From Paragordius varius (taxonomy: Eukaryota > Animalia > Nematomorpha), in assembly GCA_964247055.1 (NCBI GenBank), contig OZ176052.1:2232001-2296000 (forward strand): DNA of 64,000 nucleotides. Direction: 5' to 3'. Shown in pieces: positions 3,088 through 38,700 of this stretch. The notes under the pieces are model-generated. The model saw only the letters and a list, made by a program, of their open reading frames with translations. It was not told the origin of the DNA and did not search any database. A program made the translations under genes and the position numbers. The number at the start of each line of letters is the position of its first letter. Position 1 is the stretch's first letter.

Positions 3088-6000
3088 TTAACGGGGTCGA
3101 TTATTAAACGTTTTTTGATATCGATTATCTTTATTGTTATAATTATTATTATTATTGTTGTTAATCATTTGATTTCCTGTGTAACGCATTCCCATATTAT
3201 GCCTTGGACCATTGAGACCCCCAACGTTAAAAGATGACATCATTTGGTTTGGGGTTCGGGGAGCACCCGTGGCATTAAAGTGATAAGGATCATCTCTGTA
3301 ATGAGATAAAAAAATTACTGTAAAAACCGTATAAGATATTATGCCTCAAATGACAATTTTTATATCACTTTTTATCATAAAAGGCTAGACACAAATTGTA
3401 TCAATTGATCTTTTCAACTCTTCAACTCTCACTTATACTTCAAGTATAAAACTATAAAGGCGCCTTAACCTTAAAAGGTTAAACAAAAGTAACTATTAGA
3501 TTTGCACAATAGAAATATATATTTCATACATCAATAAATACGGATGTTTTTATGTGACAACTCTCCATAAATGTATATACGAAACGCGTTAACCCAAAAT
3601 TAACCAACTTTTTAAAGTTTTATTTAAAGAGTAAATTTTACTGCATTTGCTGTTGTTGACGAAGCATAAGGGCTGCCTGAAGGGCCATGGCAGGATTCGG
3701 AAGGCCAGAATTCGGTCTTAAAGCTGGACCTAACAGGCTTGTCGCATTATTCATATTAAAATTATTATTAGTGTTTGAAAGTAAGGCAGCACCCATTTGT
3801 CGAGCAAGCAAAAGTTTACCCACTAACCCGCTCACATTATTAACGTTATTTGCGTTGTTTTGCATAAGGAGTTTGGACATGACATCTCCAATGTTGGCAT
3901 TTGTTGCATTGTTAACGGAAAAATCTACAATTTCACAGTTGGTAAAAAATCGATAAAAGAAGCGTTTTTAAATTTTATTTTGTAATCCATAAAATTGGAA
4001 AATAAAATTGGTATTTATGAAATTTTTAATCAATTTAGGAAAACCGATATAAATGTGATTAAAACCAAATTAATTAACAACATTTTTATGCAAAAATAAA
4101 TTTGATTAAAGAATTTCAATTTAAAATCGAAAAATTGTGCAAGGGACCAACTACCACTCCTTTTAACATTGTGCATGAAAATGTAAACATTATATTATTT
4201 AATCTTTCTTACAGAATATTATTTCTTCTTATTTTATTGATGGTATCCATTTTTACAATAATTAAAATTTAATTTTTACCGTAAAGATTTTTTGATATGT
4301 ATTACAAAATTAGACTACGATATTGTTAAAAATAGTTTTTCCCACATAATTATTTATAACTGATTGCGTTATTTATAATTTCACATAAATTTAGAAAAGT
4401 AGAATAGAATATACATACTATTATCAGGTCCGTTATTGTTCATGTAGGACCCACTAGATAAATATGATTGTTCGGGCATCCCCGTATTAAGGACATGAAA
4501 ATTATCTTGAATCCTACGTGGAATGTTAGGGGAAGGATTGCCATTGTTAATCATTAAATTATTGAATTGTTGAGGTTGGGGTATTTGATTAAATGCAAAT
4601 GCATTATTATTATTATTATTGTTGTAATTTGGAAAATTATTACTATTTATATTATTATTGGCAAAATTATTGAATGTTTTGCGGTTAAAATCGTTTTCTT
4701 CAAGGTTCTTTTCAGGATCTAAATTAGTTTTACTCTCTGTTTTAACATTAGTGGTGAAGGGAGATTGATATTTTGAGGTAATATCACCACCAGCGAAATT
4801 GGTCGCATCTACACCATTGTCTATTTATAAAAATGTTTAAATAATATATATTTTTGTCCGCAAAAAAGCCCACAATTTCAAAAAAAACTTTATTATAATT
4901 TTGTTAATAGCAATTTACAAAATAAACAATATACCGTTTTTTTTAAACAATACGATAAGAATTAAAGCGAAAAAAAATGGTTAAAATGAAAACATAATGT
5001 AATTTAAGTTTAAAACAGGATATAAATTACCTCCTTTATTATTTGCAAAGTTCTGACAACTTAAATCTAATCCAGGTATCCCATTTGTGTTATTAATGGC
5101 ATTCATTTTGTAATTAGAACTATATTCATTAATATTATGGTGGTTGTTATCAATCATATCTAACCCTGGTATAAGATTTAATTCTTTCGTAGCATTCATA
5201 TCAATGGATTTGTTTAGCGAAGTATTTTGACTATTAACTCCAATATCGGATTTATTTAATGATTCATCCGCTACGAAAAAAATGGATAAATTTGGTAAAA
5301 AGTATTTGGTTAGTATTATAAAAAAAACGTAATTTTTAAAATTTCCAAAAATAAAACTTAAAAAAATTATATGATAAATATGCCATGTAAAAATATACTA
5401 ACCTATATTTGTAGATGGTAGGATATGTAAAGCGCTACGACCCGTGCTATATGAAGATAAGTCAGTTTTGATGACTAAAACGAATAATATAAAAATATTT
5501 ATTATTTACAACAGTAAAATTAAGAATATAAAGACAACACATTAAAATTGAAAATTATTTTTTTATAAAAACATCCATATATTTGAAACCTTGATTTTTC
5601 GAAATATAACTTATCATTTTTAGTTGCAAAAATACGGATGTAAATAGATAACTTTCGATATTTTACAATTGTAATTATAAAGTTATATAGAAAACAAGGT
5701 TTAAAAAGTCCATTAAAAATTGAAATAAACGGACAAAACTTAAGCATAAAGACAAATATTTTTTTTCAAAAAAGACCTGTACTTTTTAAACATGTTTTTT
5801 CCTATATAAATCATTAAATTACAATTTTTATTTATAAAATTAAGTGCATTACGAATTTACATCTCTATATCCTATTTCGCAAACCAAGATGATGAGTTAT
5901 ATTAAAAAAACAGGATTAAAAAGTACAGTAGTCTTTAAAAAAAATATTTGTCTTTTTGTACTAACGTTTTGCCGGAAAAATTTAATTTTTTCCCTATGTC

Positions 6001-12000: not shown

Positions 12001-13900
12001 AGATATAAACATTCTAAGTAGTTAATCGACATTATTGATCAATTTTTACAATAAACATATATAGCTGCTTTCGGAAAAAAAATAAATGCGAATTTGAGAA
12101 TTAAAAATTTACCTTAAACCCCTAACTGCATCCTTATGAGCTGGGAACATTTTAACATTATTCATGTTACATTGCCAATATTTGATGTAACCGCCGTGAT
12201 CAGCTGTTACCATCCATTGATCATTGTGACTCCAAATCATACATCGGACTGGCGTGTCATGTGCCTAAAACAAAAAAAATTATTAAAGATAAATTTTATT
12301 TTAAACCAATTTTATAAAAAAAATTGTTTTAAATACAATTTTTGTAAAACAAAGTATGAAACCAATTTCGGCCAAATTTTTCTACTATAAGACGTTTTAG
12401 GTGTATGATTCGGTTATATTTTGATTTAATAGTATTATTAAATGATATATAATTATAAGCTATATAATCCTAAAACCAAATTCGAATCGCGCATCAGGCA
12501 TGAAAAACTATATTTTTTTAAAATAAAATAATTTGTCAGTATTTTCACATGCTATAATTAAAAACGTGTTGCATGCACACTTATTAGCAAAAGCGTTTTA
12601 GAAATTACAAACTTATAATAAAAAAGCATTATTTCCTACTAAATCTAGTTGATACAGTACCTGTAACACAAAACAAACTGTAACTAAAAGAAAAAAAGGA
12701 CCTGTAAAATAGTTTCAAAATTGAAGGTAAGACCATTCCAAAGAGTAAATTCTCCACTAGAGGCACCGGTTATAAGTCGACGTCCATCAGGTGTCCAAGC
12801 CACACAAAAGATGGGGCATTTTATTTTATTTGTGGCGGCTCGGACAAATTTGGTCGTTACGGCATTGTAGGGATTATCTAGATAACCTTCCGGGGGTAAC
12901 ATCTAATAACATCAATATGAATGACAAAATGTGTGTCTTTATAAATTATGTTAAGGATAAAATATTTAAAAATGATCTGTGTGGACAAATTATTATTCTA
13001 AAGTTTCTTACATCAACTGTGTATAGAGGATCAGGTTCTGGATAAGTTGTATCTCGAATATCTCTAGTCCAGGCTCTTTTCTAAAACAATATTAGAACAA
13101 AAAATTGACATTCAACATTATATTTTAAAAAAATAGCAGAGCATTTCAAACTTAAATATTTTAACAAATATCCTAGATATTGTAAATAATAAAAAAATTG
13201 TTTATATGATCTTTTAAAGCATATTATAAAAACTTATTTAAAAATAGTGAAATGTATTATCTCAAATTTTTGCCGCCAAATAAATTATCTGATTTTTCAA
13301 TCTGAAAAAACCTGGCATATAATAATTCTGATTAAAATAATTTTATTAATTTATTTAAAAGGCTTATATTTTGAAATAAAAAATTTTGGTTAATTAATTG
13401 ATAAAATTAGCGGTTTGTTTCAAAAAAAGCAATGCAACTTTTTTAGCTATGCAAATTAAAATTGTAAAAATTATATTTCGTCTACCGATAAATGGGTTTA
13501 AAATTAATTAAAATACTTTATTTTCTATAAATTTTAAGACTTAAAACTTTAAAATATATTGTTCATAAATTTTAAAAATAATGAAATGTTAAACTTATCA
13601 TATATAGTAAAAAATTACCTCCAACAAATGTAAAATAGATGAATTTTGATCTACAGTTTTTCTAGTAATAGATTTTCGAACTCGTTTTCCATCGAGCCCA
13701 ATGGTTAAACCACTTTGAGCAGGTGTCATAAGATGTGGTAGGGCTGGCAGTTGATGTGTAGAACTATATTTGGCCGCAATCGAATTCAGTTGAAATGATA
13801 TTTTATTGACCAGAACCGGTTTGTAGGACGGTTGTTGAAGTTGCATTTGTCTAAAACTTTCCATATCCGTAATTTGAGATGGAGGTGCCAGAGCCATCAT
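3088..13900 (-). CDS. WDR33: Pre-mRNA 3'-end processing WD40 protein WDR33 (Pfs2-like), 15 exons
   Basis: Exons join in frame through GT-AG introns: [17 protein letters not shown]; [55 protein letters not shown]|AHDTPVR; [26 protein letters not shown]; [11 protein letters not shown]; [16 protein letters not shown]|[10 protein letters not shown]. An N/Q-rich tail ends in exon 3088-3295 (TAA). The start is ATG 13900 or 13864. Confidence 0.95.
7301..7531. mobile_element. MITE family A copy 1 (TACCATT...AATGGTA termini, AATTCACCC subrepeats)
   Basis: Terminal inverted repeats taccatttacaattcaaattcaccc / gggtgaatttgaa...aatggta. The same internal sequence recurs near 35700, 37650 and 45090. Confidence 0.75.
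10440..11460 (-). pseudogene. Probable decayed non-LTR retrotransposon (LINE) RT C-terminal remnant in a WDR33 intron
   Basis: Strong G>C strand skew over ~1 kb. Broken minus-strand frames give RSADDDLL (YADD-like) and [14 protein letters not shown] (K..I.P.L.Y-like), with many stops and frameshifts. Confidence 0.3.
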
Positions 13901-13966
13901 AAGCAAATCAACGGGTAAGTGAACGAATGAATATTATAGAAAATTTTAAACGATCCCTCTCTCCAT

Positions 13967-15704
13967 ATGATGATAAAATTAGGGCATTTTTGGTTTTATG
14001 CGATTCGTTGGTTTATCTTGTTTATATTCCTTCTCAAACATATATCGTGTGGCAATGTTTATAAACTTAATGAAGATAATGTCGACAATATTTTTTCTGG
14101 GAGGTGGATGATCAAATTGTATAAATAATTTTTATATTTAGTTATGCGGATTGGTGCCCTGCTTGCCGTGATTTAACTTATCCATGGGATCAACTAGAAA
14201 AAGAAGCCGATAATTTAGATATTAATATAGGATCCATAAATATTGAGCGACATCCAGGTTTATCTAATTTATTTCTAATTTACCAGAATTAAGTGGACGT
14301 TTCTATGTCACATCCCTACCGACGATATATTAGTAAAAAATATAACTAATATTTTAGCATTGAAAATGGTGTTTTTCGAAATGCCAAATATTTAAACACT
14401 GCTGATAAGTTAATTGATTTTGTCAAAAACAAAGAATACATAAAAATTGATCCGTTACCAGTTTGGCGGTCTCCAAAATCCTTCCAGTATTTTGATTTCT
14501 CTAATTAATAGAATGCGATTATTGGGAAAATTTTACAAATTCTCATTGCGTATTAAGGTATATGCAACATTTTATATCATCATAGGATTTGCATACTAAA
14601 ATGGTAGATGTTTATAAAATCCCTGTTTGGGCATCTTATTTAATTTTTTTGGTCGCAACTATTTTGATCGGAGCCTCTATGGGAATGGTAAATTTTTTGA
14701 TTAATTTAAATTAACAAATAATTTTAATAAACTATTCGTTAAAATAAATATAATTAATTTTATATTTTTTCACTTCGATTTATAACCTAAAAATTCATAT
14801 TTTTTCACGAATTAGACTCTGAATCAAGTGATTTTTTTGGTTTTGATATATTTTTTGTGTTAGTTGCCAGAGTTCCGGACATTAAAATATTATTCTTAAA
14901 AATTCTTTTTGTTTTTTTTTATTTCATGGTTTTGGGTTCTTTTTTGAATCTTAATAGCCATTTTAGATACATGTTAAATAAAAATATAACCTATAAACAC
15001 TAATCTTTAATGCAAAATATAAATTAAATACTATTAGGATGACTAAAAAATTATTAAGAATGGGGTTTTTAATAATTGAAAAAAATAAAAAATTTAAATA
15101 ATTTTTTAAAACGTACTTTTTTAGTTATTTTTTATATTTTTTTACCAAATCGAAAGGTAATAAATGATTCTGATTTCTTGGTTTATCATCTTTTATTATA
15201 TTGTTCTTCATAATTATTTGTGTTTTGTTTAACATGACCATTCTTCATTAATTTTTTAAAACAACTTTTTTCCTTATATTATTGTAACAAATACAAATAA
15301 ATGCAAATAATAAAACAAAACAGGAATATTACATTATTTTTATATTTTCAAATTCACTATTATTAGTCTTTATATATAAGATTGAAAAAATTAAAATAAT
15401 ACTTACATATCAGACTCAAACTCAATTTTATATTTGAAATACACAAAATTACTTTTTAGGGCTTAGTATTTGTCATGGATTTTTATGGGTCACTCCGAAA
15501 ATCGGATTCATACATGGAGGATGAAAATATTATACAACAAGGAAGGAAAGAAAAACCACACCATAATGGCCAAGGGGACGACCATGAGAAAGAAGTAAGA
15601 ACTTTTTAAATAAAATTAGTATATTTCAAAAATGATTTTTATGTCCTTAAACGCTCGTTTATTTTTAGATAACCCTTAAATGCTTCGTAAAATTATTTTT
15701 ATAA
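13967..15704 (+). CDS. TMX1: Thioredoxin-related transmembrane protein TMX1-like
   Basis: Signal peptide MMIKLGHFWFYAIRWFILFIFLL, then GRWMIKF|YADWCPACRDL...HPE|LSGRFYVTSLPTIY|IENGVFR, and a TM segment IPVWASYLIFLVATILIGASMGM|GLVFVMD. Introns at 14119-14141, 14258-14286, 14333-14357, 14487-14511, 14558-14585 and 14688-15459 all keep the frame. The exon ending at 15594 is secure; the last exon (15669-15704) is tentative. Confidence 0.9.
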
Positions 15705-19300: not shown

Positions 19301-22300
19301 AATGTAGATTTATTTTTGTCAATCTCTTAAAACCAAAATAATCCTGGTAAATATTATCAACGAAATTTCGAGAAACTATATAAAGATTTCGTGTTATTTT
19401 CATTTAACCATTGTATAATTGTGAACGAAGTGCATGTTATTCCGAATAAGTCAGTTTAAAAAAATCCATTTATACTCGGATATTGTTGGATCTACCACCA
19501 GCCAGTTAAATGAATTTATTTTATCGGTGAAAGTATTAGTGTTAAATTTTAAAAAGATTATTGTTATTATAGGACCAAAATATTTTTTACTAAACGAAAA
19601 TGTTAATTTGCTGCTTTTTTTCAAAATGATTTGTGGCTATCCAAGCTGTGTTATTTGTCAGATATTTTTGGGTCAAACGATTTTCACTTGTCTCTTCAAT
19701 TGCGATATATTTACTTTAAATAATAAAATTGAAATCATTTGGAAAAGTAGGGTCAAAAAAAATTCGTTCGAAATGTTTTCCAGTGTCGACAATTTTGTAA
19801 TTAAGAAAATTCATTGTAAAACTTTTATTGCAAAAACTATTGTAGATCACTTAAAAGTGTTAGAAATACAGTATATTTTATATTAAATATTGATTTACAA
19901 AAAATAGTTTGGATTCAAAAGCCGTTTTAGATAGGCTTAAGTGAGAGATCGATCATTTGCCACTTAAAGCTCAAGAGGAATTTGCTAGGCTTTCGTGTGA
20001 CTAAAGCTTAAAACTACAATTTAATAAAAAGCCCTTGACAGAATTCTGGATCGGAACTAGAACAGAGTTTCCCACAATCGCCGATATGGCATTAAATGTA
20101 CTTCTGTCATTCAACACCACATATTTATGTGAAGTTACTTTCTCAGCTTCAATACACATTAAATCCCAATATCGTTCAGAAATAAAAAATGTTGAAGAAT
20201 GAGGTCTTACATCCAGTAGTTTCAAACATTACACCAAGATTTTGTTATGCAATAAAAAACAGACATATCCATCTCATTATTTTTAACGTAAACTTTAATT
20301 TAATATTTACCACGCAACTACTTGGATATATTGGAAAGAATTAAGACGGTCAAAATCCACTTTTGTTTTTTAAACTATAATAAAATTTTTCTAACATTTA
20401 GTGCAAATTTAAATTTTAGATTTTTATATGTTTTAAAAAGAATTCTAAATTTATATATTTCATATGCATATGTATATTGTTACCTAATTCTTAATATATA
20501 ATCAAAAAATATTATTTTTTTTTAAATTTGTTGGGAATCATAAATGGGGTACTGTAAGGTTGATTTATTCACGTATAGCAGTATGGTATAATAAAATAGA
20601 GTTGAGCGATAAAAAGAAAACCAAAATAAAAAAGTGAGTTGCTATTATATCACAAGTTCTTTTTATGTGTGCATGCCTTATTTGCGTAGACGTTACACAA
20701 TGGTTATTCTCAACAACAGATAAGCTTTAACACGAAATATATATATATAATATTGAAATACAAAATAACTGATGCAACATGAATTGAGTGTGTTAACAAA
20801 ATAGAATATTATAACCTTACATTACTCTCCCCCTAAGTTAACCACGGGGGCTGTCGTGTTCGTACATTATACCTATAAGTTTAAACGATCGGGAGGCTGC
20901 CGTCTTCTTAGCGGATATCTACGCTCGGGTAGGTCAGAAACCTCCTTTACCACGTCGGGTGTAGCCTCTACAGGCGTCAGCGATTCTGGGGTACGTCTTG
21001 CCATGAGGTAGCAGGCGTTGGGGCATGGACTATTTGAGATTCCGAGGTGGGATGGAAGGTTTGTTCGGAGTGGGCCTCGACATGACCCGGGACACTTTCG
21101 ACGCTGGGATATTTATGCTCTATTAAGGGATTAGTTTCGTATGAATTCCCTCCTGACCTACGTCGTAACTGATCTGCATGTTTACGTTTTCGAATCCCTT
21201 CCTCATCTTGCACTTCATACGAGAGTAACCCCCTTCTCTCCAGAATGTGACCTGGCCGCCAGCCTACGGCCATTTCATTTTTAATATAGACAGGATCGTC
21301 TTGTTGGAATTCGCGTCTCGGTTCATTTTCGTGCTCTATAAATTCGACAGGGGTTGTTTTTACCCAAGAGATAGGATTGTGTACACGCCGTTTTAGGAAT
21401 ATGGCGGAAGGAGTTTCTTTTAGCGAAGAATGCATGCTAGTTCGATACGAATAAAGGACCGTGTTGATAGCTTCATATGCATGCATTTGTTGGGTCTTAG
21501 TAGCGGCGTATTTCGTTTTTAATGTCTTTATTACTCTCTCTACTAGACCGTTTGTTTTGGGGTGATAGGGTGCTGCACAGATGTGCTTTATATTCATATG
21601 ATTTAGGAGAGTCGTAAATTCTCTTGAAGTAAAATACGTGGCGTTATCGGTCACAATTTGGCGGGGAAAACCAAATCGTGCGATGTGTTTTTCCAGGCAA
21701 TTTAAAACGCTTTGACTCGTTATTGATTTAAGAAGATCTATCTCTACCCACCGTGAGGCGCTATCGATAGTCACTAACCAATAATATCCGTCCACCGGTC
21801 CAGCAACATCTATATGTAACCTTTCCCATGTCAAAGTGTTAAAATTCCATCGATAGGGAAGATTTTCAGGTGCGTTAGGTCGATAGGTTTGGCAAGCCTC
21901 GCACCTTTCCACATAATTCTCTAGATCGGTGTCTAATTCGGGCCAAAATACCGAACACCGGGCTTGGGCTTTCATTGTTTTTAGCCCGCTGTGTCCCGTA
22001 TGCAGAAGTTTCAATATCGTTTCCTGCATCGCTTGTGGTATCACTAAGCGATCATTCAGGTATAACAGATTATAACAACACTCCAAGTCGTTTTTATGTT
22101 TTAAAAAAGGTTTCAGATCTTCGTCGATCCAACTGTTTGTCCTGAGAGCATTTTTAACTTTTGATAACCGTTGGTCAGTGATCGTTGCCTCTTCGACCAC
22201 TTTCTTATTTACATCCAGCGTTTTTAGAGCCAAATATCGTACCTGCTTGGTGGCCGCGTCGGCTAAGTTTTCTTCCCCTTTCTTGTAAAATATTTCATAC

Positions 22301-25300
22301 TCGTACCCGATGGTCTTCGATATCCACCTGAGCAGTTTGCTATTATTAATGTTGTTGATGTCTCTCTTCCGCCCAAATAGTGACACTAGCGGTTTATGAT
22401 CTGTATATATCTCGAAAGGTCTTCCATATATAAAGTATTTAAATTTTTCTAGGGCAAACACTATGGCTTTGGCCTCTTTTTCGATCGTGGAATAACTCTT
22501 TTCTGCTATTGAACAAGTTCGTGACGCGTAAAAAATTGGGCGTTTCCCCTGTGGGGTCTTATGAAACAGTATTGCCCCAAACCCCTTGTTGGAAGCATCT
22601 GTTTCGATCAACAATGGAAAACGGTCGTTAAATGGCATTAAAGCGGGGGGCCTGGTTAGCAAGCTTTTTGCTTTCGCGAATTCACTATCATCTGCCGGGG
22701 TCCACCGCCAAGGTGTATTCTTTCCACTTAACTTGTGTAAGGTTGCTAGGTGTGGGTGACAGTTTGGTATAAACCGCTCATGAAAATTTATTAAGCCTAA
22801 GAACGAACGTAGCTCAGTTTTGTCTGTAGGTGTCGGACAATTTTTAATGGCCTCTAATTTTTCATTGGACGGCTCAATACCTTGGTCAGAAATCACGTAC
22901 CCCATGTATTTGACTCGTGAGATACCAATTTGCAATTTGTCTCGGTGCAATCGTAATCCCGCCTCTTGTAACCTTCTAAATACTTCCCTTAATCTTTGAT
23001 CATGTTCCTCCCTGGTAGCTCCGGAAATTAAGACATCATCCAGGTACACACAAATACCAGGTATGTCCTTTAAAAGATTGTCCATGCATCTTTGAAAGAT
23101 AATAGGTGCTGAAGTTAATCCGAATGGAAGTCGCTGGTAAGCATAAAACCCTTTGTGAGTTGTGATGGTTACTAGCGTCTGTGACGCCCGGTCTATCGGA
23201 AATTGTAAGTAAGCATCTTTAAGGTCTAAAGTGGAAAAAATTATCCCATTTGCCACTTTGGTGGCCAACTCGTCAAAAGTAGGTATCAGATGAGAATCTT
23301 TTGCTAAATAACGGTTGATACTAATTCGGAAATCGGCACATATCCTAATTTCTCCATTTCCTTTAACTATATTTACTGTGGGAGAGGCCCATGTTATTGG
23401 GGTTTGGGTCGGATCGATAGGTCGGAGTATTTTGAGTTTAACTAATCTATCAATTTCATTTTCTACTAAAGGTTTTAGAGTTAAAGGTACCCTACGACAA
23501 GGAAAAACTTTAGGTTTGGCCCCGGGGTCGATAAATAATTTTATTGGGGGCCCCTTGAAAGTACCTAACTCGTCTGAAAACAATTTGTCAAAATAATCAA
23601 ATAACATTTTATTATTAGGTGCTTGCGTATGTAAAACTGAAAAAACATTTTTTGGGAATTCTAACCGAAACACCCGCATCCAATTCATCCCGAACACTGC
23701 TGGCGGGTTAGTTTGCGTCACCACGCAGGGCAGGCACTTCTCCTCTTCGTTCAAAACCACTGAAATCATCGATTTTCCGAGTACTTCTATCGGGCCATCA
23801 TTGTAGGTTCGCAAATTTGGAGCTGGGAGCAAACGAGGTCGACCAATATTTACCCAAGTGCGCTTGCCAATAACGGATACCTCGGCGCCCGTATCGTAGA
23901 TAAACGTTGTTGGTATATTATTTATTAATACTTGAATCCGGGGGGTGTTGTTCGGGCTAGTCATGGTGCGGATTGACGGCCGTCGGAACGTTGCCTTGCA
24001 TACTGTGCTGAAATGATTCCATTTGTCGCAATTGAAACACCGTTTTCCTTTTGCCGGACAGGTGGCGGAACCATGTCGATACCCACAATTACTACATAGC
24101 TTTCGGGTTATTTGATTGATTGTATTATTATCATTAACAACTGGTTGGATACTTGAAGGAAGTTCACTGGTATTATTATTGTTCATATCATTATTATCTC
24201 TGATGTTGTGAACCTTTTTATCTTCTAATTCATAGGAATAAGCGATGTCTACAATCGCTTGAAGGGGTACCGGACCCCCGTCCTTTTTGCCATCTGGATA
24301 TTTGGATTGAATTTCGCGTTCTACTCTGGGATTTTCAAGACCTACTAGGAATAAATCGCGTAATTTTGACTGAATATCCCCTTCAAATTTCCCGGCTTCA
24401 CACTTTGCCTTCAGACGTTCCAGGAAATCCATGACTGATTCATCTGGCATTTTTTTTAATCGGTAGAATTCAACTCGATTTAACCATAGGCTGCTGATTG
24501 GTGAATATATCTGAGTGGCCAAGGTTGCAATTTCCTCCCATTCCATGTCATCTATGAGTTTTGGGTATGCTAACGTTTCGATTTTCATTATTACTTGAAT
24601 ACCGCCGAAAGCGAGAAAAGTGCGTTTCATTGTGGTGTCATTGGATTCGATATTTTTGGAATTTAAGACTCTCCTGATGTGACGTATATATTGCGTAAAA
24701 TTCATCGGCTCCTTAAAAGGCTCCAAAATCAGTTTTGAAATGTCCAACGCTTGGCTCATTGAAAGCTAATACGGCACCAAATGTAAGGTTGATTTATTCA
24801 CGTATAGCAGTATGGTATAATAAAATAGAGTTGAGCGATAAAAAGAAAAACCAAAATAAAAAAGTGAGTTGCTATTATATCACAAGTTCTTTTTATGTGT
24901 GCATGCCTTATTTGCGCAGACGTTACACAATGGTTATTCTCAACAACAGATAAGCTTTAACACGAAATATATATATAATATTCAAATACAAAATAACTGA
25001 TGCAACATGAATTGAGTGTGTTAACAAAATAGAATATTATAACCTTACAGGTACGAATTACAAAAGTTTAAGAAGCCCTGTAAAAGAAAAGTCAATACAA
25101 AAATAAAAGACAACATTTCGTTTAAAAGGAGCATTTATTATTAACAAGATTTTTTGGTCAAATTAAAAGTTTTTCATTTAATGTGTTTTTAAATCAAAAA
25201 TTTCCAGCTATTATGGTCCAAAATTTTGTCTCAAATTAATAAACATTTTCCAAAAAATATATAAAATAATAATTAAGTAGAAGAATAATATACGTGGGAA

Positions 25301-29100: not shown

Positions 29101-29855
29101 TAATATTTTTACGTGAACGTAACTAAATGTCAAAAAGGAGGTGGTTCATATTTTGGGAATCATAAATGGCTATTTATTAAAAACCGTATCAGACGAGTAA
29201 TGCAGGAAAAACCAAAAAATTTAAATGATATTTTGCTTATTTTCTAAAACAAAGAGGTAAAATGAATCAACTTACAAAATAGGTTAAAAAAAGAGATATT
29301 GTTTAGAATTAAATTGGCTGAGTGTTTTGATTGCACTCAACAAAATCACGATATTCGCTTTGACCGTCGCCTGTATGAAAGCTTAACATATTTAGATATA
29401 TTGACTTTTTAATTATCACATCAAAATATTTGTACTGGTATAAGGTAATACTGTATACTGTATATCATCTACTAGCTAGCTGAATCTTTAGTATTATAAA
29501 CATTAAAAAGGCTGTTAAACTTTAGAAAAAGTTATTTCTGGTAATTGTATATTATTATCAAAGAGGGAAAAATCAGATAATTTTTGTTAATAATTCATAG
29601 TATGTATTATATTTTGGGTTAGCAATCCATCATAAGATAATTTTAATTAAAAAATGACACTTTGGTGAGATTATAGCCAATAAAATTAAAAAATGCGGTA
29701 AAATGTTTTAATTTTATTTTAAAATGAACACATAAAAAATTGTTTTGATTTACACCATATAAAAAAGATGAACCATAATTTACAAGATGTTCCCTTTTTT
29801 TAGTTTAAATTAAATTTTGGGCTTTATCGAATTTTACTTTCAAATTTAAAAAAAA

Positions 29856-29971
29856 ATTACGACACCCGGGATTCCCAGGCGGTCACCCATCCAAGTACTA
29901 ACCGGGCTCAACGTTGCTTAACTTCGGTGTTCGGAAGGGAACCGGTGCTTTCAACGTGATATGGTCGTAAT
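29856..29971 (-). rRNA. 5S rRNA gene, single dispersed copy
   Basis: ATTACGACCATATCACGTTGAAAGCACCGGTTCCC...CCGAAGTTAAGCAACGTTGAGCCCGGTTAGTACTTGGATGGGTGACCGCCTGGGAATCCCGGGTGTCGTAAT has box A and box C, a perfect terminal helix and a T-run Pol III terminator. Confidence 0.96.
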
Positions 29972-30272
29972 ATATTTGTTAAAAATTGAAATATAACTTA
30001 TATTTTGTTTTTACTACACAAAACTTTTTCTTGGACGAATCGATTTAGGGGAAAAGAAATCAAAATTCTAGTAAAGGACGCATGTCGTCAATCTCTGCGC
30101 ACTATGTTAATTTAATATTGTAATTAGTGCCATTGGCATAATTTGGGAATTTATATATCTTATATAATCACCTATGTGTTTATATTTTATAAAATATTCC
30201 GCTTAATACGCTGCCTTGGGTTTGATACACGAAATACAAATATATTTCAATGGCATATTTCTTTAACACTTC

Positions 30273-32709: not shown

Positions 32710-35700
32710 TTAAATACAATGGTACAATTTATTGGCATTAACGATAAAACTTGAGGGCTCCTGAAAGTCTCTGGTAATCCCAAATTCTACATTACACTAA
32801 AATAAAAAATTAAATTTATAACCATGCGATCATATATAACATTAAAATTACAAATATTTAAGGTTTACATAATGTTCATTTAACCATAACAATTTAAACC
32901 TACACTATTAGACAAAAACATTTTATATTATTATCGAAAATATAATTACAAAAAGATCATAAACATCACATTTTTTCACCAAATATGTAATAAATTTAAT
33001 GATAAAAGTCGCAAAATAATAGCTACCTTTGGACAAACGTCGTCGAGTAGGTTTATGAAAAGCTGAACCACTTTGTAATGCTTCCAATAAGCTATCCATA
33101 ACACCTTCGTGTTCACCCTCTAAGTATGGAAACATATTAATTAAAACTTATTTTAATTTTATTTTTGTTTTAATTTTAATAAAATTAGAAGATTTTTTAA
33201 CGATAATAATATAAATAATAATATTTTTATTAATTTCGCCGATTAATAATATATAGCCTGCGTAACCTTTGTTGTAACATAATAAGTTATGCAAGTAGAG
33301 ATTGGACCCAATTAAAAAAAAGTTGATAATTACTAATAATCAATTTTCAAGTGTACCCCATAACTTGTATAAAATCATAAAATAAAAAATTGATTATTTC
33401 ACAGTTTGTAATATTTATTAATTTTTACGTTAGTCCTGATTCTCAAAAAAGAAAATATTAACAATAAGTAATGAATGATATAATATAGTATATTAAACTA
33501 TCAGTTTCAATGTTATACAAAATTTCCATCCAATGTAATTTAGACAAAGTAATACTTCGTTTTTAGCAAATTATTCAATAGGTGTATAATTTTATTTTTA
33601 GGCCCATTTATACGGCCGTATAAGAATTTATTATTATCAACCTTTAAGGGTTTTTTTCTCCCGACAAGGAGGTAACCCTTTGGATAGCTCCACGCCATAA
33701 ATTCATTATTAATTATATATATAATTTTTAAATCAAAATCTTTTCATTTTGAGTCTAAAAAATTATAGTATGAGTAAGGATCCGTTTTTTCAATAGCATA
33801 GCATATGCAAAAAAAGCATTATTATTGGCTAATGGTAGTAAAAAGTAAAAAAAATAACTATACACCAATAATAGTACTTCCCATATGCATCTGGCAATAA
33901 ATGATAAACTAGTAATGCATCCTTACTAATACTGCAATATCCAATATATATAACCCTTTGATTAGATTTAAATCAAACTAAACCATGTTACTAATCTTCT
34001 TAATTAATTAACCTGCATTCATATCAACGATAGCTTTTCGCTTAAATTTATCCCGTTTTTCTTTTTCGATGCGTTCCCTGGTTTCTCGGGCCTTTTTTGA
34101 TTTTTCGTCGGCTTCCTTTATTTTATTGCATTCGGTTTGAGCTTTCTGAAATTTTAAGAAATAACATAATAAATTATAGCCTTAAACATGGATAATTTAA
34201 AAGTACATAAATTTATTTAAAAAATTTGTTGTATACTATGTACACTTCAAAAAAATTTAAAGAAAAAGTTCATAAATATTTATTGTAGATCAGTTTTTCG
34301 TACCTAACACTTGGAATTATTTTCCTAATATATATACTATTTTAATCTTTGCATTTGGGAAAATTTTACAGTTTAGAAATAAACCAGAAAATATAATTTA
34401 AAATAGTATATTACCATACCTGAAAATTAACAATAAATGCTTTAATGTCACTGAAAAAATCTTCCATTTGATACTTTTTGGTGTCAAAACAAAAATATGT
34501 GGCCATCTGAGCATAGGTTGCATCCATTTTATCGTACATACCCTTCAATATTCCGTATTGTTCTTCGGATTGGTTATAGAACTCGTATAATCATTCATAA
34601 ATAATTTGTATGAGTCAAGAATAATTATATTTTGTTTAACTTTTATATATAAATTAGAAACGATAAGAAGCGTGAAAAGTCATTTTTTGTAAAATTTATT
34701 AAATTAAAATGTCCATATTCTTAAAACATGACCTAATCCTAATGGTAAAATTAAGGCTTTATAACCATAGCCAGTTCGTTCAAAAAACTCTTTAATCACA
34801 GAAAAATAATTTTCGCGTTAAACTTTCAATTTTTGCGGCAACCTTTTCAAAACAAAATTTTCTTTAGAAACCATCATTGATATAAAATTTGAAATTCTCC
34901 TGAAAAAAAATTCGTTAAAAAAATAAAAAATGGTAAAAAGCATATCTTCATTATAGGTATAAATTTGTCCTTGTCAAAATTGTAGGTTGAATCACGTCCA
35001 CACAAATCCAATTCGGATTTTACGAGTTTAAGCGATGTCCCAAGTTGATTCAAAGTTTTGGTTATATTTTCTTGACACACTAAATGTAAAATTTAAAAAA
35101 AACGTAATTACAAAAAAAAACAGTAAATATTGAAATCATAAAGGCAAAAAGCGTAATTACAAAAAAAAAGTTAACCATATTTTTGGCCTTATTCTGTTTA
35201 ACATAGTATTATAATCTAACTCTTCTTTCCTCTCAATTTATATCCAAAACAATAGGTTATATTCAATATACAAGTTTTATAAAAAAGTATGGCTCCCTCT
35301 ACAAATTTATTTTTAACTGTACTTTTTCCCTTAAAATGTATCCAAAATAATTAAATTTAATAAGAATTAAACAAAAATTTAATGCTATATAAAGTATAAC
35401 CCTTTGAAGCCTTATCAATAAACGATAATTCCGTGAAAAAATCTTTGAGATCAGGATATGAGTTATCAATCGTTTGGACAAGAAAATGGAGTAACGTTGT
35501 AGTTTGATCATCACTTTTAGTATTTTGAATCTAATTTGTGTATAAAAAACTTAAGCACAATAATTAAATTTAAAAATTGTAATGCCATAATTGTTAAGAG
35601 GCTAATTTCGCAAAACATTATAAAAGACAAACAAATTTTCGTAGATCACAAAAGTATAATATCGAAAAGCGTAATTTTATAATTGCTAACTTGGTATCAT

Positions 35701-38700
35701 TTACTATTCAAATTCACCCCAAAATTAAACTATATGTTTTCGGGGTAATATAACTCATCATTAATATGAAATATATATTTATGGCATAGTTTATTCTTTT
35801 TTTTCAAATTTCATTTTAAACTAAATTTCATTTTTTAATTCTAAAAAATATAGATATTTTTTATTCTTAAAAGTATATATGATATTTTAGGATGACTTTG
35901 AATTGTTCAAGGGTAAATTTAAGTGTTGATGGAATATTAACAGAAGTTATTTATTGAGAGTAAAGATTGAAAAATTGTGATTTTCCTATGATTGGTATGA
36001 CCCCTTATAAAAAATAAAATATTTTTTCAAAAAAAATTGATTAATTACATGCTATAAATACAATTTGTTAAAATTCTACGTACCTTGGTTAAAAAACTAA
36101 GTTCAAAACCATAACTTTGAGCATTGTTTGAACCGGAATTCATATAATTCCCAATCAATAGTATGAGTTGTAACAATCGTTGGAATTTTTTACTTTTATT
36201 AATTTGATCACAACACCCAGAGACAGAAACGATTGCCTATTTAAAAAATAATCACAATCCATAATCAAAATCAAAATTGTAAAAAAGTCATCAAAAACTA
36301 AAGGATAAATATTTATAATGATGACAGATTAATTTTAAATTAATTTGAACGATACTAACTATAAATGTAGAATTAAGTGTGTGTTATGAATTAACTTCTC
36401 TCTATTCCATACTTTCCCAAAACGATAACCTTCATTAAAAAAAATAAGTATGGCTTTGAAAAAATATTTGTCTTTTTATACGCTTTGTATTTAAATTTGT
36501 ATTGTAATTATTGAGATATCAAGAAGAATGATAAATTCATTGAAAAAATTAATTTATATCCGTATTTTTAAACCTTGATTTCAAAGATATAATGAAAGTT
36601 TTGAAGTTTTGTGATAAAATGAATTGAAATGTAAATTGGCAAGAAAGTCATTATATATTTTACAATTATAATCATATAAAAGATTTTGTGGAAAAATAAA
36701 TATGTTTTCCTTATTAAAATATTTAGTTTTAAACCATAATTTTAACTGTTAAACCATTATAATATACCAAAAAATATATACAATTTAGAAAAATTTATAA
36801 AATAAGTTTCATACTGGTTTAATGTCAGACACCATTTCGTTATATTTAATTTTGAAACATATGCACTTCAATCGGGCTTCAATACGTTTGATTGGTGCAA
36901 TCTGCAAAAATAAAAAAAACGGATAAAATAATTAAAATAGAGTATGAAAATATATTTCTTCCAAACAATTTTTTTAAAGTGTTAATAAATTTTTATAATA
37001 AAATATAAGTTTAAATGGAGTGTAAAAAAATAAATTTTTTAGAATTTTTAAAAATAAAATTCCAATTTAAAAAAAAATAAAATGGAAATTCCCCATACCA
37101 TAACTAAAAATCTTTCGGCTTCATTTAACATGTCAGGCCTTTGACCATATTTTTGAGCTAAAGTGTCAATTCTTTCTTGTTCAGGTATGTATTTTATCAA
37201 TTGTTGCAAAATTTGATCATCTAATTTGGGTTGAGATGTGGATGTAATTAGGCTATTCCCATTCGTGGTTTGTGTTGAACTACACAAGGTCACAATATAA
37301 ATTGGATATAAATTTCACAATTTTGATTGCGGTAGCAATTAATTATTTGATTAAAAAACTGATCATGATTGCTCTTTTCAAATTTCAAATAGGAGAACAT
37401 CCTCCTAATTATTTGTAAGTAATAATCGTTTATGTCAAAAACTTGTGGTATTTTGGGGACATGATAATTAGTTAAAAAAATTATTCATATTAAAATATGT
37501 TTTATTGAATAATTTAATATTAAGACTTATTTGATATCGTATTTAATTTTAAATTTTCCCATTAAAGGGTCATATGCGTATTATGATCCATGTATTTTCT
37601 GTGGACATTATGGAAAGTAGGGGCGTATAGTATTATAACTGATATTCAATTATACCATTTACAGTTCAAATACACCCATGAATAATTTATATTTACCCTT
37701 GAACAATCAAATTCACCCTCGAACAATTCAAATTCACCCTAAAACAAATAAAATATGAAATACTGTTTAAATTTAATATAATGCTGAAAAATAATAAACT
37801 ACGTAGTAAAAATAAATTTCATAATCAATAATAAGTTATATTAGCCCGAAACACTTAATACATTTTTAGGGTGAATTTGAATTGTTCAAGGGTGAATTAG
37901 AATTGTGAATGGTATATATATATATACTATTTATAATAATTTTTTTAACCAAAATTTTACTCGATATCCGTCAAATTATTTGATTGAGAAGGTATAGAAT
38001 CAATGGGTAAGGGTTCATTGATGGACCAAATGAGATCACATATGGCTTCGTAAGGGAGTTTTATCGAACCCAAACATATTGCTAATGGAGAATATAATAA
38101 AATTTTGCAATTATTTAAGGCAAAATTATACTCAAATGAATAAAATTTATAAAAAGTAAGGCGTGTGTCTTACATATATTTTGAGCAGATTTGGCATCAA
38201 GGACTCTCAATTTGCGAACTTTTAGCGATTGAGATGTTTGATACGTCGATGAAAAATGTCCATTTCTATGCGTGTTATCACCCATGCTTGTATTACTGAA
38301 TACACCTATATGGACAAAAAAAGGATAAAAAGAAATCTTTCTAAGGAAAGATAATACAGATATTATAACCGTATAAAAAATTCATATTACTATTTAAATT
38401 ATCTTTTATAGTAATAACCAAACTTATTCTAGTATATAACAAAAATTTTGAATTTATAAAGATATTTATATACCAGAATGATTTAAAGCGCTATCATCAA
38501 ATTCATCATTATCGTTTCCATCATTTTCTGTCGCTGAGACATGTATATTGGATTTAGAATCACGAGCGTTTCCTATATATATATATATATATGACATATA
38601 ATATATTTAAAAATATTATATTGTATTGTAATATAATGGATTAGGATTCAAAGTTTTATATAATTATTGAAATTTCATTTATTAATTTATAGGTTAAAAA

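What the first reader, a model, noticed from the sequence alone, without database searches (positions are those of the whole stretch)
14119..14585. Five consecutive ultra-short spliceosomal introns (23, 29, 25, 25, 28 nt) in TMX1
Seen: each GT-AG removal is required to restore the thioredoxin/TMX frame. The introns are almost pure A/T with no room for a separate branch point and pyrimidine tract. From recall, their positions (F|Y, P|x, IY|, before the conserved M, and so on) match vertebrate TMX1 introns, so these are shrunken ancestral introns. Established: most animal introns are at least ~45-70 nt, and sub-30-nt introns are known from only a few reduced lineages. The organism's spliceosome must handle both 23-nt and 7-kb introns.
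Basis: partly seen in the sequence, partly recalled or inferred. Interest (0 to 1): 0.75.

Follow-up and report, generated by a model that had tools for sequence, protein, structure and literature searches.

The report
Five tiny introns in worm TMX1
A thioredoxin-type membrane protein gene (TMX1) of a very AT-rich worm genome, probably a horsehair worm, is split by five almost certainly genuine introns of only 23-29 bases. They sit exactly where a fish has introns of 78-926 bases, so they are shrunken ancestral introns in a lineage where this is not yet published.

Summary
Five GT-AG segments lie in a TMX1/TMX4-family gene on the + strand: 14119-14141 (23 nt), 14258-14286 (29), 14333-14357 (25), 14487-14511 (25) and 14558-14585 (28). 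None has a length divisible by three.

With these segments removed, the exons, read one at a time, map without gaps onto TMX1 of Daphnia, a spider, an ant, frogs and fish. Exactly one residue is left over at each split codon.

The recalled match of intron positions also holds. In a catfish TMX1 locus, exons 2-6 are 116, 46, 129, 46 and 102 nt, identical to this gene, with the same phases.

A sixth intron, 14688-15459, is 772 nt, so tiny and ordinary introns coexist in one gene.

U1 and U2 snRNAs are canonical, and SF1 and SF3b1 are present. Three of the five introns carry CTAAT with its branch A 7-8 nt before the 3' end, so there is room for a branch site, though not for a pyrimidine tract.

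No RNA evidence could be reached.

Published work (MBE 2026) reports introns under 30 nt only in myxobolids and dicyemids.

This scan has already flagged the same class many times elsewhere in this genome; this is one more, unusually clean, instance. The joined spliced protein was never built or searched.

The parts
13967..14118 (+). Exon 1 (152 nt): start codon, hydrophobic signal-like N-terminus, start of the thioredoxin domain
   Evidence: Translation. The last 20-40 residues align to TMX1 orthologues and end one residue before exon 2 begins.
14119..14141 (+). Intron 1, 23 nt, GT-AG, phase 2 (inside the Phe codon before YADWCPAC)
   Evidence: Same position and phase as intron 1 of catfish, Daphnia and ant TMX1.
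14142..14257 (+). Exon 2 (116 nt): WCPAC active site
   Evidence: Pfam Thioredoxin profile positions 26-60. PDB 1x5e residues 30-67, ungapped. Catfish exon 2 is also 116 nt.
14258..14286 (+). Intron 2, 29 nt, GT-AG, phase 1; CTAAT with branch A 8 nt from the 3' end
   Evidence: Shared with catfish (78 nt there); absent in Daphnia and ant.
14287..14332 (+). Exon 3 (46 nt): LSGRF..LPTIY
   Evidence: Catfish exon 3 is also 46 nt.
14333..14357 (+). Intron 3, 25 nt, GT-AG, phase 2; CTAAT with branch A 8 nt from the 3' end
   Evidence: Shared with catfish (205 nt), Daphnia (71 nt) and ant (164 nt).
14358..14486 (+). Exon 4 (129 nt): end of the thioredoxin domain
   Evidence: Its only PDB match is TMX1 chain 1x5e, in register from residue 84. 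Catfish exon 4 is also 129 nt.
14487..14511 (+). Intron 4, 25 nt, GT-AG, phase 2; CTAAT with branch A 7 nt from the 3' end
   Evidence: Shared with catfish (218 nt).
14512..14557 (+). Exon 5 (46 nt)
   Evidence: Catfish exon 5 is also 46 nt.
14558..14585 (+). Intron 5, 28 nt, GT-AG, phase 0; no TAAT
   Evidence: Shared with catfish and ant (158 nt).
14586..14687 (+). Exon 6 (102 nt): start of the transmembrane helix
   Evidence: The catfish locus holds an unannotated 102-nt exon at the same place.
14688..15459 (+). Intron 6, 772 nt, GT-AG, phase 0: an ordinary-sized intron ending in a T-rich tract
   Evidence: Exon 7 continues the frog and Daphnia alignment directly after exon 6. Same position as ant intron 4 (82 nt).
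15460..15609 (+). Exon 7 (147 nt plus TAA stop): rest of the transmembrane helix and a charged tail. The whole coding sequence is 741 nt, 246 codons plus stop.

Best explanation
These are five genuine major-type (U2-dependent) GT-AG spliceosomal introns of a single-copy TMX1/TMX4-family gene. The gene encodes a signal sequence, a thioredoxin domain with CPAC, one membrane helix and a charged tail. The introns are the ancestral bilaterian introns of this gene, kept at the same codon and phase as in a teleost but shrunk to 23-29 nt. A sixth ancestral intron in the same gene stayed at 772 nt. The likely mechanism is recognition across the intron. A reduced donor (GTA or GTT followed by A/T) is read by a normal U1 and U6. 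A branch site of the type CTAAT or TAAT, 7-13 nt before the 3' end, pairs with the normal GUAGUA of U2, helped by SF1 and SF3b. A TAG or CAG acceptor follows almost at once, with no real pyrimidine tract. Shown here: the anatomy, the collinearity, the positional homology, and the presence of the machinery. Inferred: the actual cutting in RNA, which adenosine branches, and how efficient the splicing is. Every tiny intron has a length that is not a multiple of three, so a retained copy would shift the frame and meet a stop within 13 codons. Unspliced messages could therefore be discarded rather than translated.
For: Coordinates, GT-AG ends and frame bookkeeping come. Exon by exon, every piece maps end to end onto consecutive residues of TMX1 from Daphnia, spider, ant, damselfly, frog, lungfish and zebrafish, with exactly one residue left for each split codon and none at the phase-0 junction. 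PDB gives TMX1 chain 1x5e for exon 2 (residues 30-67) and as the only match for exon 4 (in register from residue 84). The 16 residues between them equal 1 + 14 + 1, as the model predicts. Catfish TMX1 exons 2-6 are 116, 46, 129, 46 and 102 nt, identical to this gene with identical phases; the ant shares four positions and Daphnia two. The gene is single copy in the genome. U2 carries GTGTAGTATC and U1 carries ACTTACCTG. SF1 and SF3b1 are encoded. CTAAT lies 7-8 nt from the 3' end in 3 of 5 introns, against a mean of 0.16 in shuffles. The size class recurs in an unrelated gene on another contig: a BiP-like HSP70 has 23-nt and 28-nt introns, and their removal is collinear with an in-genome paralogue that is uninterrupted there.
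Against: No transcript, cDNA or RNA-seq evidence could be reached, so excision itself is inferred. The branch-site signal is weak. The CTAAT test was chosen after seeing the data. The generic YTRAY motif is found in only 3 of 7 introns (P = 0.3). Two TMX1 introns (1 and 5) have no good match. 'No length divisible by three' in 7 introns is expected by chance about 6% of the time. I could not fetch the orthologue from a related hairworm.
Confidence: 0.9

Rival explanations
1. The introns are real but poorly or conditionally spliced. A large share of transcripts keeps one or more of them and is degraded, as reported for the very short introns of Microsporidia. On this reading the tiny introns act as a brake on expression rather than being neutral.
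For: All five shift the frame and bring a stop within 13 codons if retained. The donors are reduced to GT plus A/T, and two introns lack a recognisable branch motif. PMC13644364 cites a median splicing efficiency of about 25% for microsporidian short introns.
Against: TMX1 is a conserved single-copy housekeeping-type gene, and five inefficient steps in series would leave very little product. The machinery looks normal. There are no RNA data either way.
Confidence: 0.1
2. The segments are not spliceosomal introns. They would be short DNA insertions in a decaying pseudogene, assembly errors, or germline-limited DNA cut out of the genome, as ciliate internal eliminated sequences are.
For: There is no RNA evidence. 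Frame-joining GT...AG pairs are common by chance in this AT-rich DNA.
Against: All seven exons are open and conserved, with the active site intact. All five segments lie at the exact nucleotide of ancestral introns and have GT-AG ends. At roughly 0.002 per site for both dinucleotides, chance gives about 5e-14 for five sites (my estimate from base composition). The segment ends are GT and AG, not the TA ends of ciliate eliminated sequences. The same size class occurs in a second gene on another contig.
Confidence: 0.02
3. The mature message uses different, longer introns that skip some of the small exons, so the tiny segments are never removed one by one.
For: Exons 3 and 5 are only 46 nt. Exons that small are hard to define in organisms that recognise exons rather than introns.
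Against: Skipping exon 2 removes the CPAC site. Skipping exon 3 or 4 removes core thioredoxin strands. Exons 2, 3, 4 and 5 each have a length that is not a multiple of three (116, 46, 129, 46 nt), so skipping any one of them breaks the frame. Each of these exons is conserved residue by residue with orthologues.
Confidence: 0.02

Closest known systems
Ultra-short introns of Dicyemida (Dicyema japonicum) and myxobolid Myxozoa (Henneguya, Thelohanellus, Myxobolus), as described in PMC13644364
   Same: The introns are under 30 nt in an animal and sit at conserved ancestral positions between conserved exons. The donor is reduced to roughly GTA, the acceptor is little more than AG, and A residues lie shortly before the AG. 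U2 is canonical and the host is a parasite.
   Different: In those lineages the median intron of the whole genome is 22-27 nt and the genomes are compact. Here a 772-nt intron sits in the same gene, and introns of 69-540 nt occur in other genes I inspected. The window holds an intact-looking retrotransposon ORF, so this is not simple genome compaction. The lineage also differs: a conserved cox1 lies on a mitochondrial contig of at least 10 kb, next to other open frames, with zero-loop palindromes. That fits Nematomorpha, not dicyemids or myxozoans.
Ciliate ultra-short introns (Paramecium about 25 nt, Stentor 15-16 nt)
   Same: The size class is the same, the ends are GT-AG and the sequence is AT-rich. 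The published idea that retained short introns must break the frame fits the five lengths seen here, none of which is divisible by three (PMC5014332 abstract).
   Different: In ciliates essentially all introns are tiny; here the sizes are mixed. This genome reads TAA as stop in this gene, unlike Paramecium, which reads TAA and TAG as sense codons (my own knowledge).
Human ultra-short introns (43-65 nt), spliced with SPF45/RBM17 in place of U2AF (PMC4463651, PMC8363638)
   Same: These are short introns with a truncated pyrimidine tract handled by the major spliceosome. They offer a possible precedent for 3' site recognition without U2AF65 binding to a tract.
   Different: The human cases are about twice as long and rare. 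Whether an SPF45-like route works here was not tested.
TMX1/TMX4 family (TXNDC1; DPY-11 in C. elegans, from my own knowledge)
   Same: CPAC active site, one thioredoxin domain, one membrane helix and a charged tail. The best solved-structure match is TMX1. The sequence is collinear with named TMX1 proteins.
   Different: At 246 residues the protein is at the short end of the family. Identity to arthropod and vertebrate orthologues is only about 30-45% over the exons.

Membership tests
Major-type (U2-dependent) GT-AG spliceosomal intron | GT at the 5' end and AG at the 3' end | tested here: met
   All five, and the sixth 772-nt intron.
Major-type (U2-dependent) GT-AG spliceosomal intron | Precise removal restores one reading frame that is collinear with orthologues | tested here: met
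   The exon-by-exon maps show no gaps, with one residue left per split codon. PDB 1x5e register holds.
Major-type (U2-dependent) GT-AG spliceosomal intron | Same position and phase as introns of orthologous genes | tested here: met
   Catfish shares all six positions and has identical exon lengths; ant shares four, Daphnia two.
Major-type (U2-dependent) GT-AG spliceosomal intron | Branch-point adenosine in a sequence that pairs with U2 | tested here: inconclusive
   CTAAT lies 7-8 nt from the 3' end in 3 of 5 introns (P about 1e-4, but the test was chosen after seeing the data) and TAAT in 4 of 5 (P = 0.04). Generic YTRAY is found in 3 of 7 (P = 0.3). Introns 1 and 5 lack a good site.
Major-type (U2-dependent) GT-AG spliceosomal intron | Excision seen in mature RNA | not testable with these tools
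   No transcript of this species could be reached. The word searches gave no same-species protein.
Major-type (U2-dependent) GT-AG spliceosomal intron | The genome encodes the machinery (U1, U2, SF1, SF3b1) | tested here: met
   U1 and U2 score over the Rfam cut-off and have canonical pairing sequences. SF1-HH and SF3b1 domains were found. U2AF was not tested.
Minor-type (U12-dependent) intron | Long conserved donor (ATATCCTT-like after the first base) and a TCCTTAAC-like branch site | tested here: not met
   The donors are GTATAA, GTTTAT, GTAAAA, GTATTT and GTATAT, and none of the five holds TCCTT.
Genome-wide ultra-short-intron state, as in dicyemids and myxobolids | Introns under 30 nt | tested here: met
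   Lengths are 23-29 nt; a second gene has 23-nt and 28-nt introns.
Genome-wide ultra-short-intron state, as in dicyemids and myxobolids | The median intron of the genome is under 30 nt and the genome is compact | tested here: inconclusive
   No genome-wide census was made. In my small sample of 13 introns, 7 are 23-29 nt and the rest are 69, 79, about 105, 165, 540 and 772 nt. The window holds a 1260-residue retrotransposon ORF. A mixed distribution looks more likely.
TMX1/TMX4 thioredoxin-related transmembrane proteins | Thioredoxin domain with a CPAC active site, followed by one membrane helix | tested here: met
   Pfam Thioredoxin hit on exon 2. WCPAC and the hydrophobic stretch of exons 6-7 are read directly from the translation.
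TMX1/TMX4 thioredoxin-related transmembrane proteins | Closest named relatives are TMX1/TMX4 | tested here: met
   1x5e is the top full-length PDB match for exon 2 and the only one for exon 4. All seven exons are collinear with proteins that their sources name TMX1 or TMX4.

The most novel reading that the evidence does not exclude
Horsehair worms (Nematomorpha) would be a third, independent animal lineage with spliceosomal introns under 30 nt. Unlike dicyemids and myxobolids, these introns occur in a repeat-rich genome, where tiny and ordinary or kb-sized introns sit side by side in the same gene. Extreme intron shrinkage would then not be a by-product of genome compaction. A standard-looking animal spliceosome would be able to work with only about 16-20 nt between donor and branch site and 7-8 nt between branch site and acceptor.
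Probability: 0.7. Interest if true: 0.75.

Novelty: new member of a known kind. Interest (0 to 1): 0.6.

Why it matters
Introns under about 30 nt were long treated as annotation errors in animals. A September 2026 paper reports them in just two parasitic lineages and predicts that more will turn up (PMC13644364). This TMX1 gene is a clean textbook case in what is probably a third lineage. All six introns are ancestral, and five of them have shrunk to 23-29 nt while the sixth stayed at 772 nt.

It has practical consequences. Gene finders with a minimum intron size of 30-40 nt would break this gene and others like it. That could inflate the apparent gene loss and the low completeness scores reported for hairworm genomes.

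It also provides a natural test set for how little spacing the major spliceosome needs between donor, branch site and acceptor.

Tried and rejected
- **Exon 4 word search.** It found no candidate, because the length window excludes full-length relatives.
- **Exon 2 representative search (collected).** It returned mostly multi-domain disulfide isomerases. Only a few mis-modelled vertebrate TMX fragments were useful, and they served as stepping stones.
- **Reaching a hairworm (Gordionus) TMX1 or a same-species transcript with an alignment of guide proteins plus exon rows.** MAFFT misplaced the short exon rows unless two guides were present. A local test showed that even this gene's own exons would rank below 80 of 120 known TMX proteins with such a profile. 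I ran no further search on it.
- **An unrelated window ORF as first row.** The exons stacked on top of each other, so I dropped the idea.
- **Species identification from a stop-free COX1 piece.** It returned only unnamed fragments of at most 79% identity, so no species name came out of it.
- **Ab initio scan for tiny introns by ORF joining.** It has no power: 243 candidates against 213-282 in controls.
- **Frog TMX1 locus.** No DNA was returned because the file is too large.
- **Pfam and PDB on exon 1, and Pfam on exons 4 and 6.** No matches.
- **Joined spliced protein.** It was deliberately never built, searched or folded. Everything was done exon by exon, by reference.
- **Human DNA.** No contig that I take for human was met.

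Full report
**What is in the sequence**

The window is very AT-rich (22-31% G+C, apart from a retrotransposon at 20-24 kb). At 13967 on the + strand an ATG opens a gene. Its reading frame is interrupted five times within 470 bases by short GT...AG segments:

| Intron | Coordinates | Length |
|---|---|---|
| 1 | 14119-14141 | 23 nt |
| 2 | 14258-14286 | 29 nt |
| 3 | 14333-14357 | 25 nt |
| 4 | 14487-14511 | 25 nt |
| 5 | 14558-14585 | 28 nt |

Each string occurs once in the window. The segments are 75-91% A+T and the exons 62-72%. No length is a multiple of three. Reading through any segment meets a stop 0-13 codons past the exon end.

**Is it more than chance?**

Open frames alone prove nothing in this DNA. 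A scan for GT...AG pairs of 20-33 nt that join two open stretches found 243 candidates in the window. Reversed or locally shuffled controls gave 213-282. The evidence has to come from homology, and there it is strong.

- I translated each exon separately and aligned each piece to seven TMX1/TMX4 proteins from the word search: ant, spider, Daphnia, damselfly, frog, lungfish and zebrafish.
- Every exon maps end to end onto consecutive residues.
- Exactly one residue is left over at each of the four split codons, and none at the phase-0 junction. On Daphnia, for example, the exons end or span 42 / 44-81 / 83-96 / 98-139 / 141-155 / 156-189.
- Among solved structures, exon 2 aligns ungapped to residues 30-67 of chain 1x5e (thioredoxin domain containing protein 1, that is TMX1).
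- Exon 4 has that chain as its only match, in register from residue 84. The 16 residues in between are exactly 1 + 14 + 1, as the model predicts.
- Pfam places exon 2 at positions 26-60 of the Thioredoxin profile.
- The gene is single copy in the 110.6-Mb assembly.

**The rest of the gene**

After exon 6 (14586-14687) a normal GTAAAT donor opens a 772-nt intron (14688-15459) that ends in a T-rich tract and TAG. Exon 7 (15460-15609) continues the membrane helix and a charged tail, and picks up the frog and Daphnia alignments directly after exon 6. The coding sequence is 741 nt, 246 codons plus stop (exon lengths, with the end of exon 6 moved back one base to 14687). So intron sizes of 23 nt and 772 nt coexist in one gene.

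**Are the positions ancestral?**

I tested this on three public loci, deriving each exon chain from the protein and its own DNA.

- **Catfish (Bagarius yarrelli).** Introns lie at the same five codons and phases (2, 1, 2, 2, 0). Exons 2-5 are 116, 46, 129 and 46 nt, identical to this gene. The first four catfish introns are 926, 78, 205 and 218 nt.
- **A skipped exon in the catfish record.** The annotated catfish model skips an exon. Inside its '816-nt intron 5' lies an unannotated exon of 102 nt with AG and GT flanks, again identical in length and phase to exon 6 here.
- **Result for catfish.** All six introns are shared, and exons 2-6 are the same length to the base.
- **Ant (Dinoponera).** It shares introns 1, 3, 5 and 6.
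- **Daphnia.** It shares introns 1 and 3.

These are therefore old bilaterian introns that shrank. They are not new insertions.

**How they are probably removed**

- None of the five looks like a minor-type intron. The donors are GTATAA, GTTTAT, GTAAAA, GTATTT and GTATAT, and none holds TCCTT.
- The genome encodes U1 with the normal ACTTACCTG 5' end and U2 with the normal GTGTAGTATC branch-site-pairing stretch.
- It also encodes SF1 and SF3b1.
- Introns 2, 3 and 4 carry CTAAT with the branch A 7-8 nt from the 3' end. That is 3 of 5 against a mean of 0.16 in composition-matched shuffles (P about 1e-4), but I chose this motif after seeing it.
- TAAT occurs in that zone in 4 of 5 introns (P = 0.04).
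- The generic YTRAY motif is not enriched in 7 introns (P = 0.3).

My reading is ordinary U2-type splicing across the intron. About 16-20 nt separate the donor from the branch A, and 7-8 nt separate the branch A from the acceptor, with no real pyrimidine tract. Which adenosine is used, and how efficient the splicing is, remain inferences.

**Is the class real elsewhere?**

As an independent check I looked at HSP70 genes on other contigs.

- A BiP-like gene has GT-AG introns of 23 and 28 nt near its 5' end, then one of 69 nt.
- Removing the two tiny ones makes it collinear with an HSC70-like paralogue that is uninterrupted at those points. The paralogue has introns of 79 and 165 nt elsewhere.
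- The neighbouring WD40-repeat gene, head to head with TMX1, has a first intron of 540 nt by my reading.

Sizes are therefore mixed rather than uniformly tiny.

**What organism?**

Earlier notes of this scan call it a hairworm related to Gordionus. Those notes are unchecked leads. My own evidence is as follows.

- The mitochondrial contig carries a well conserved cox1 with TGA read as sense.
- It also carries zero-loop palindromes with arms of 131 and 97 nt that lie inside open frames. Coding palindromes of this kind are described as a peculiarity of Nematomorpha mitochondria (PMC6649704 abstract).
- Cox1 shares this contig of at least 10 kb with other open frames. From my own knowledge, that speaks against dicyemids (single-gene minicircles) and against myxobolids.
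- A COX1 piece found no named close relative, so I have no species-level identification.

**Literature**

- PMC13644364 (Mol Biol Evol, September 2026) states that introns under 30 nt are found in animals only in myxobolid myxozoans and in Dicyema. It describes donors reduced to GTa and A residues before the AG. It does not mention Nematomorpha.
- The Gordionus genome preprint and a comparative hairworm preprint never use the word 'intron'.
- No paper in the library couples Nematomorpha with intron length.
- The first hairworm genome paper (Current Biology 2023) is not held, so I could not check it.

**Limits**

- No RNA of this species could be reached.
- I could not fetch the hairworm orthologue. 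Its length puts it outside the window of any exon-sized query, and a guided profile would not have ranked it.
- The joined spliced protein was left out on purpose. All searches and alignments used single exons by reference.
- I met no contig that I take for human.

**Verdict**

It is a new member of a known kind: ultra-short spliceosomal introns, here probably in a third animal lineage and in a mixed-size setting. This scan has already flagged the same class many times on other parts of this genome. What this instance adds is the exact match to a vertebrate gene structure at all six introns.

Noticed in passing
window 13598-13906 (- strand) and 13967 (+ strand): TMX1 lies head to head with a WD40-repeat gene. 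By my reading it resembles WDR33, but the family was not tested. The two start codons are only about 66 nt apart (about 13900 on the - strand and 13967 on the + strand), so they would share a very short two-way promoter. The first introns of the neighbour are about 540 and about 105 nt, not tiny.
   Followed up: partly
window 20977-24759 (- strand): An open 1260-residue Ty3/gypsy-type pol frame (protease, reverse transcriptase, RNase H, integrase) sits in a block of 38-42% G+C that stands out from the 22-31% background. Observed only.
   Followed up: no
window 29854-29972 (- strand): A full-length 5S rRNA gene (116.5 bits) stands alone between protein genes.
   Followed up: no
L016:2724-2825 (Bagarius yarrelli, GCA_005784505.1, VCAZ01000006.1): The public catfish TMX1 protein model (P0119) skips a 102-nt exon that encodes the start of the membrane helix. 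The exon is present in the DNA with AG and GT flanks. This is an annotation error in the public record.
   Followed up: yes
L024:1224-1246, 1479-1506, 2545-2613 (G000 contig C4): A BiP-like HSP70 gene has introns of 23, 28 and 69 nt. The two tiny ones are the 5'-most of the three.
   Followed up: yes
L022 (G000 contig C44, mitochondrial): 53-314, 770-1472, 4064-4257: Zero-loop palindromes with arms of 131 and 97 nt lie inside open frames. About ten tandem 72-nt units, each itself a hairpin, lie in the same open frame that runs into cox1.
   Followed up: partly
G000 contig C3, about 257-527 kb, and other contigs: There are 46 U2 snRNA matches, many of them degenerate copies clustered on one 270-kb stretch of the window's own contig. 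Seventeen U1 matches are mostly clustered on contig C6.
   Followed up: no
window 32923-33135 and 37048-37293 (- strand): The Diaphanous-type formin lies on the - strand (DAD motif and FH2 exon found). Its exons are spread over many kb, so kb-sized introns are likely in this window, though I did not measure them.
   Followed up: partly
L022:2020-2427: The cox1 of this genome has no relative above 79% identity over a 136-residue piece among 5.8 billion proteins. This species and its near kin seem to be absent from that collection, at least for fragments of this size.
   Followed up: no
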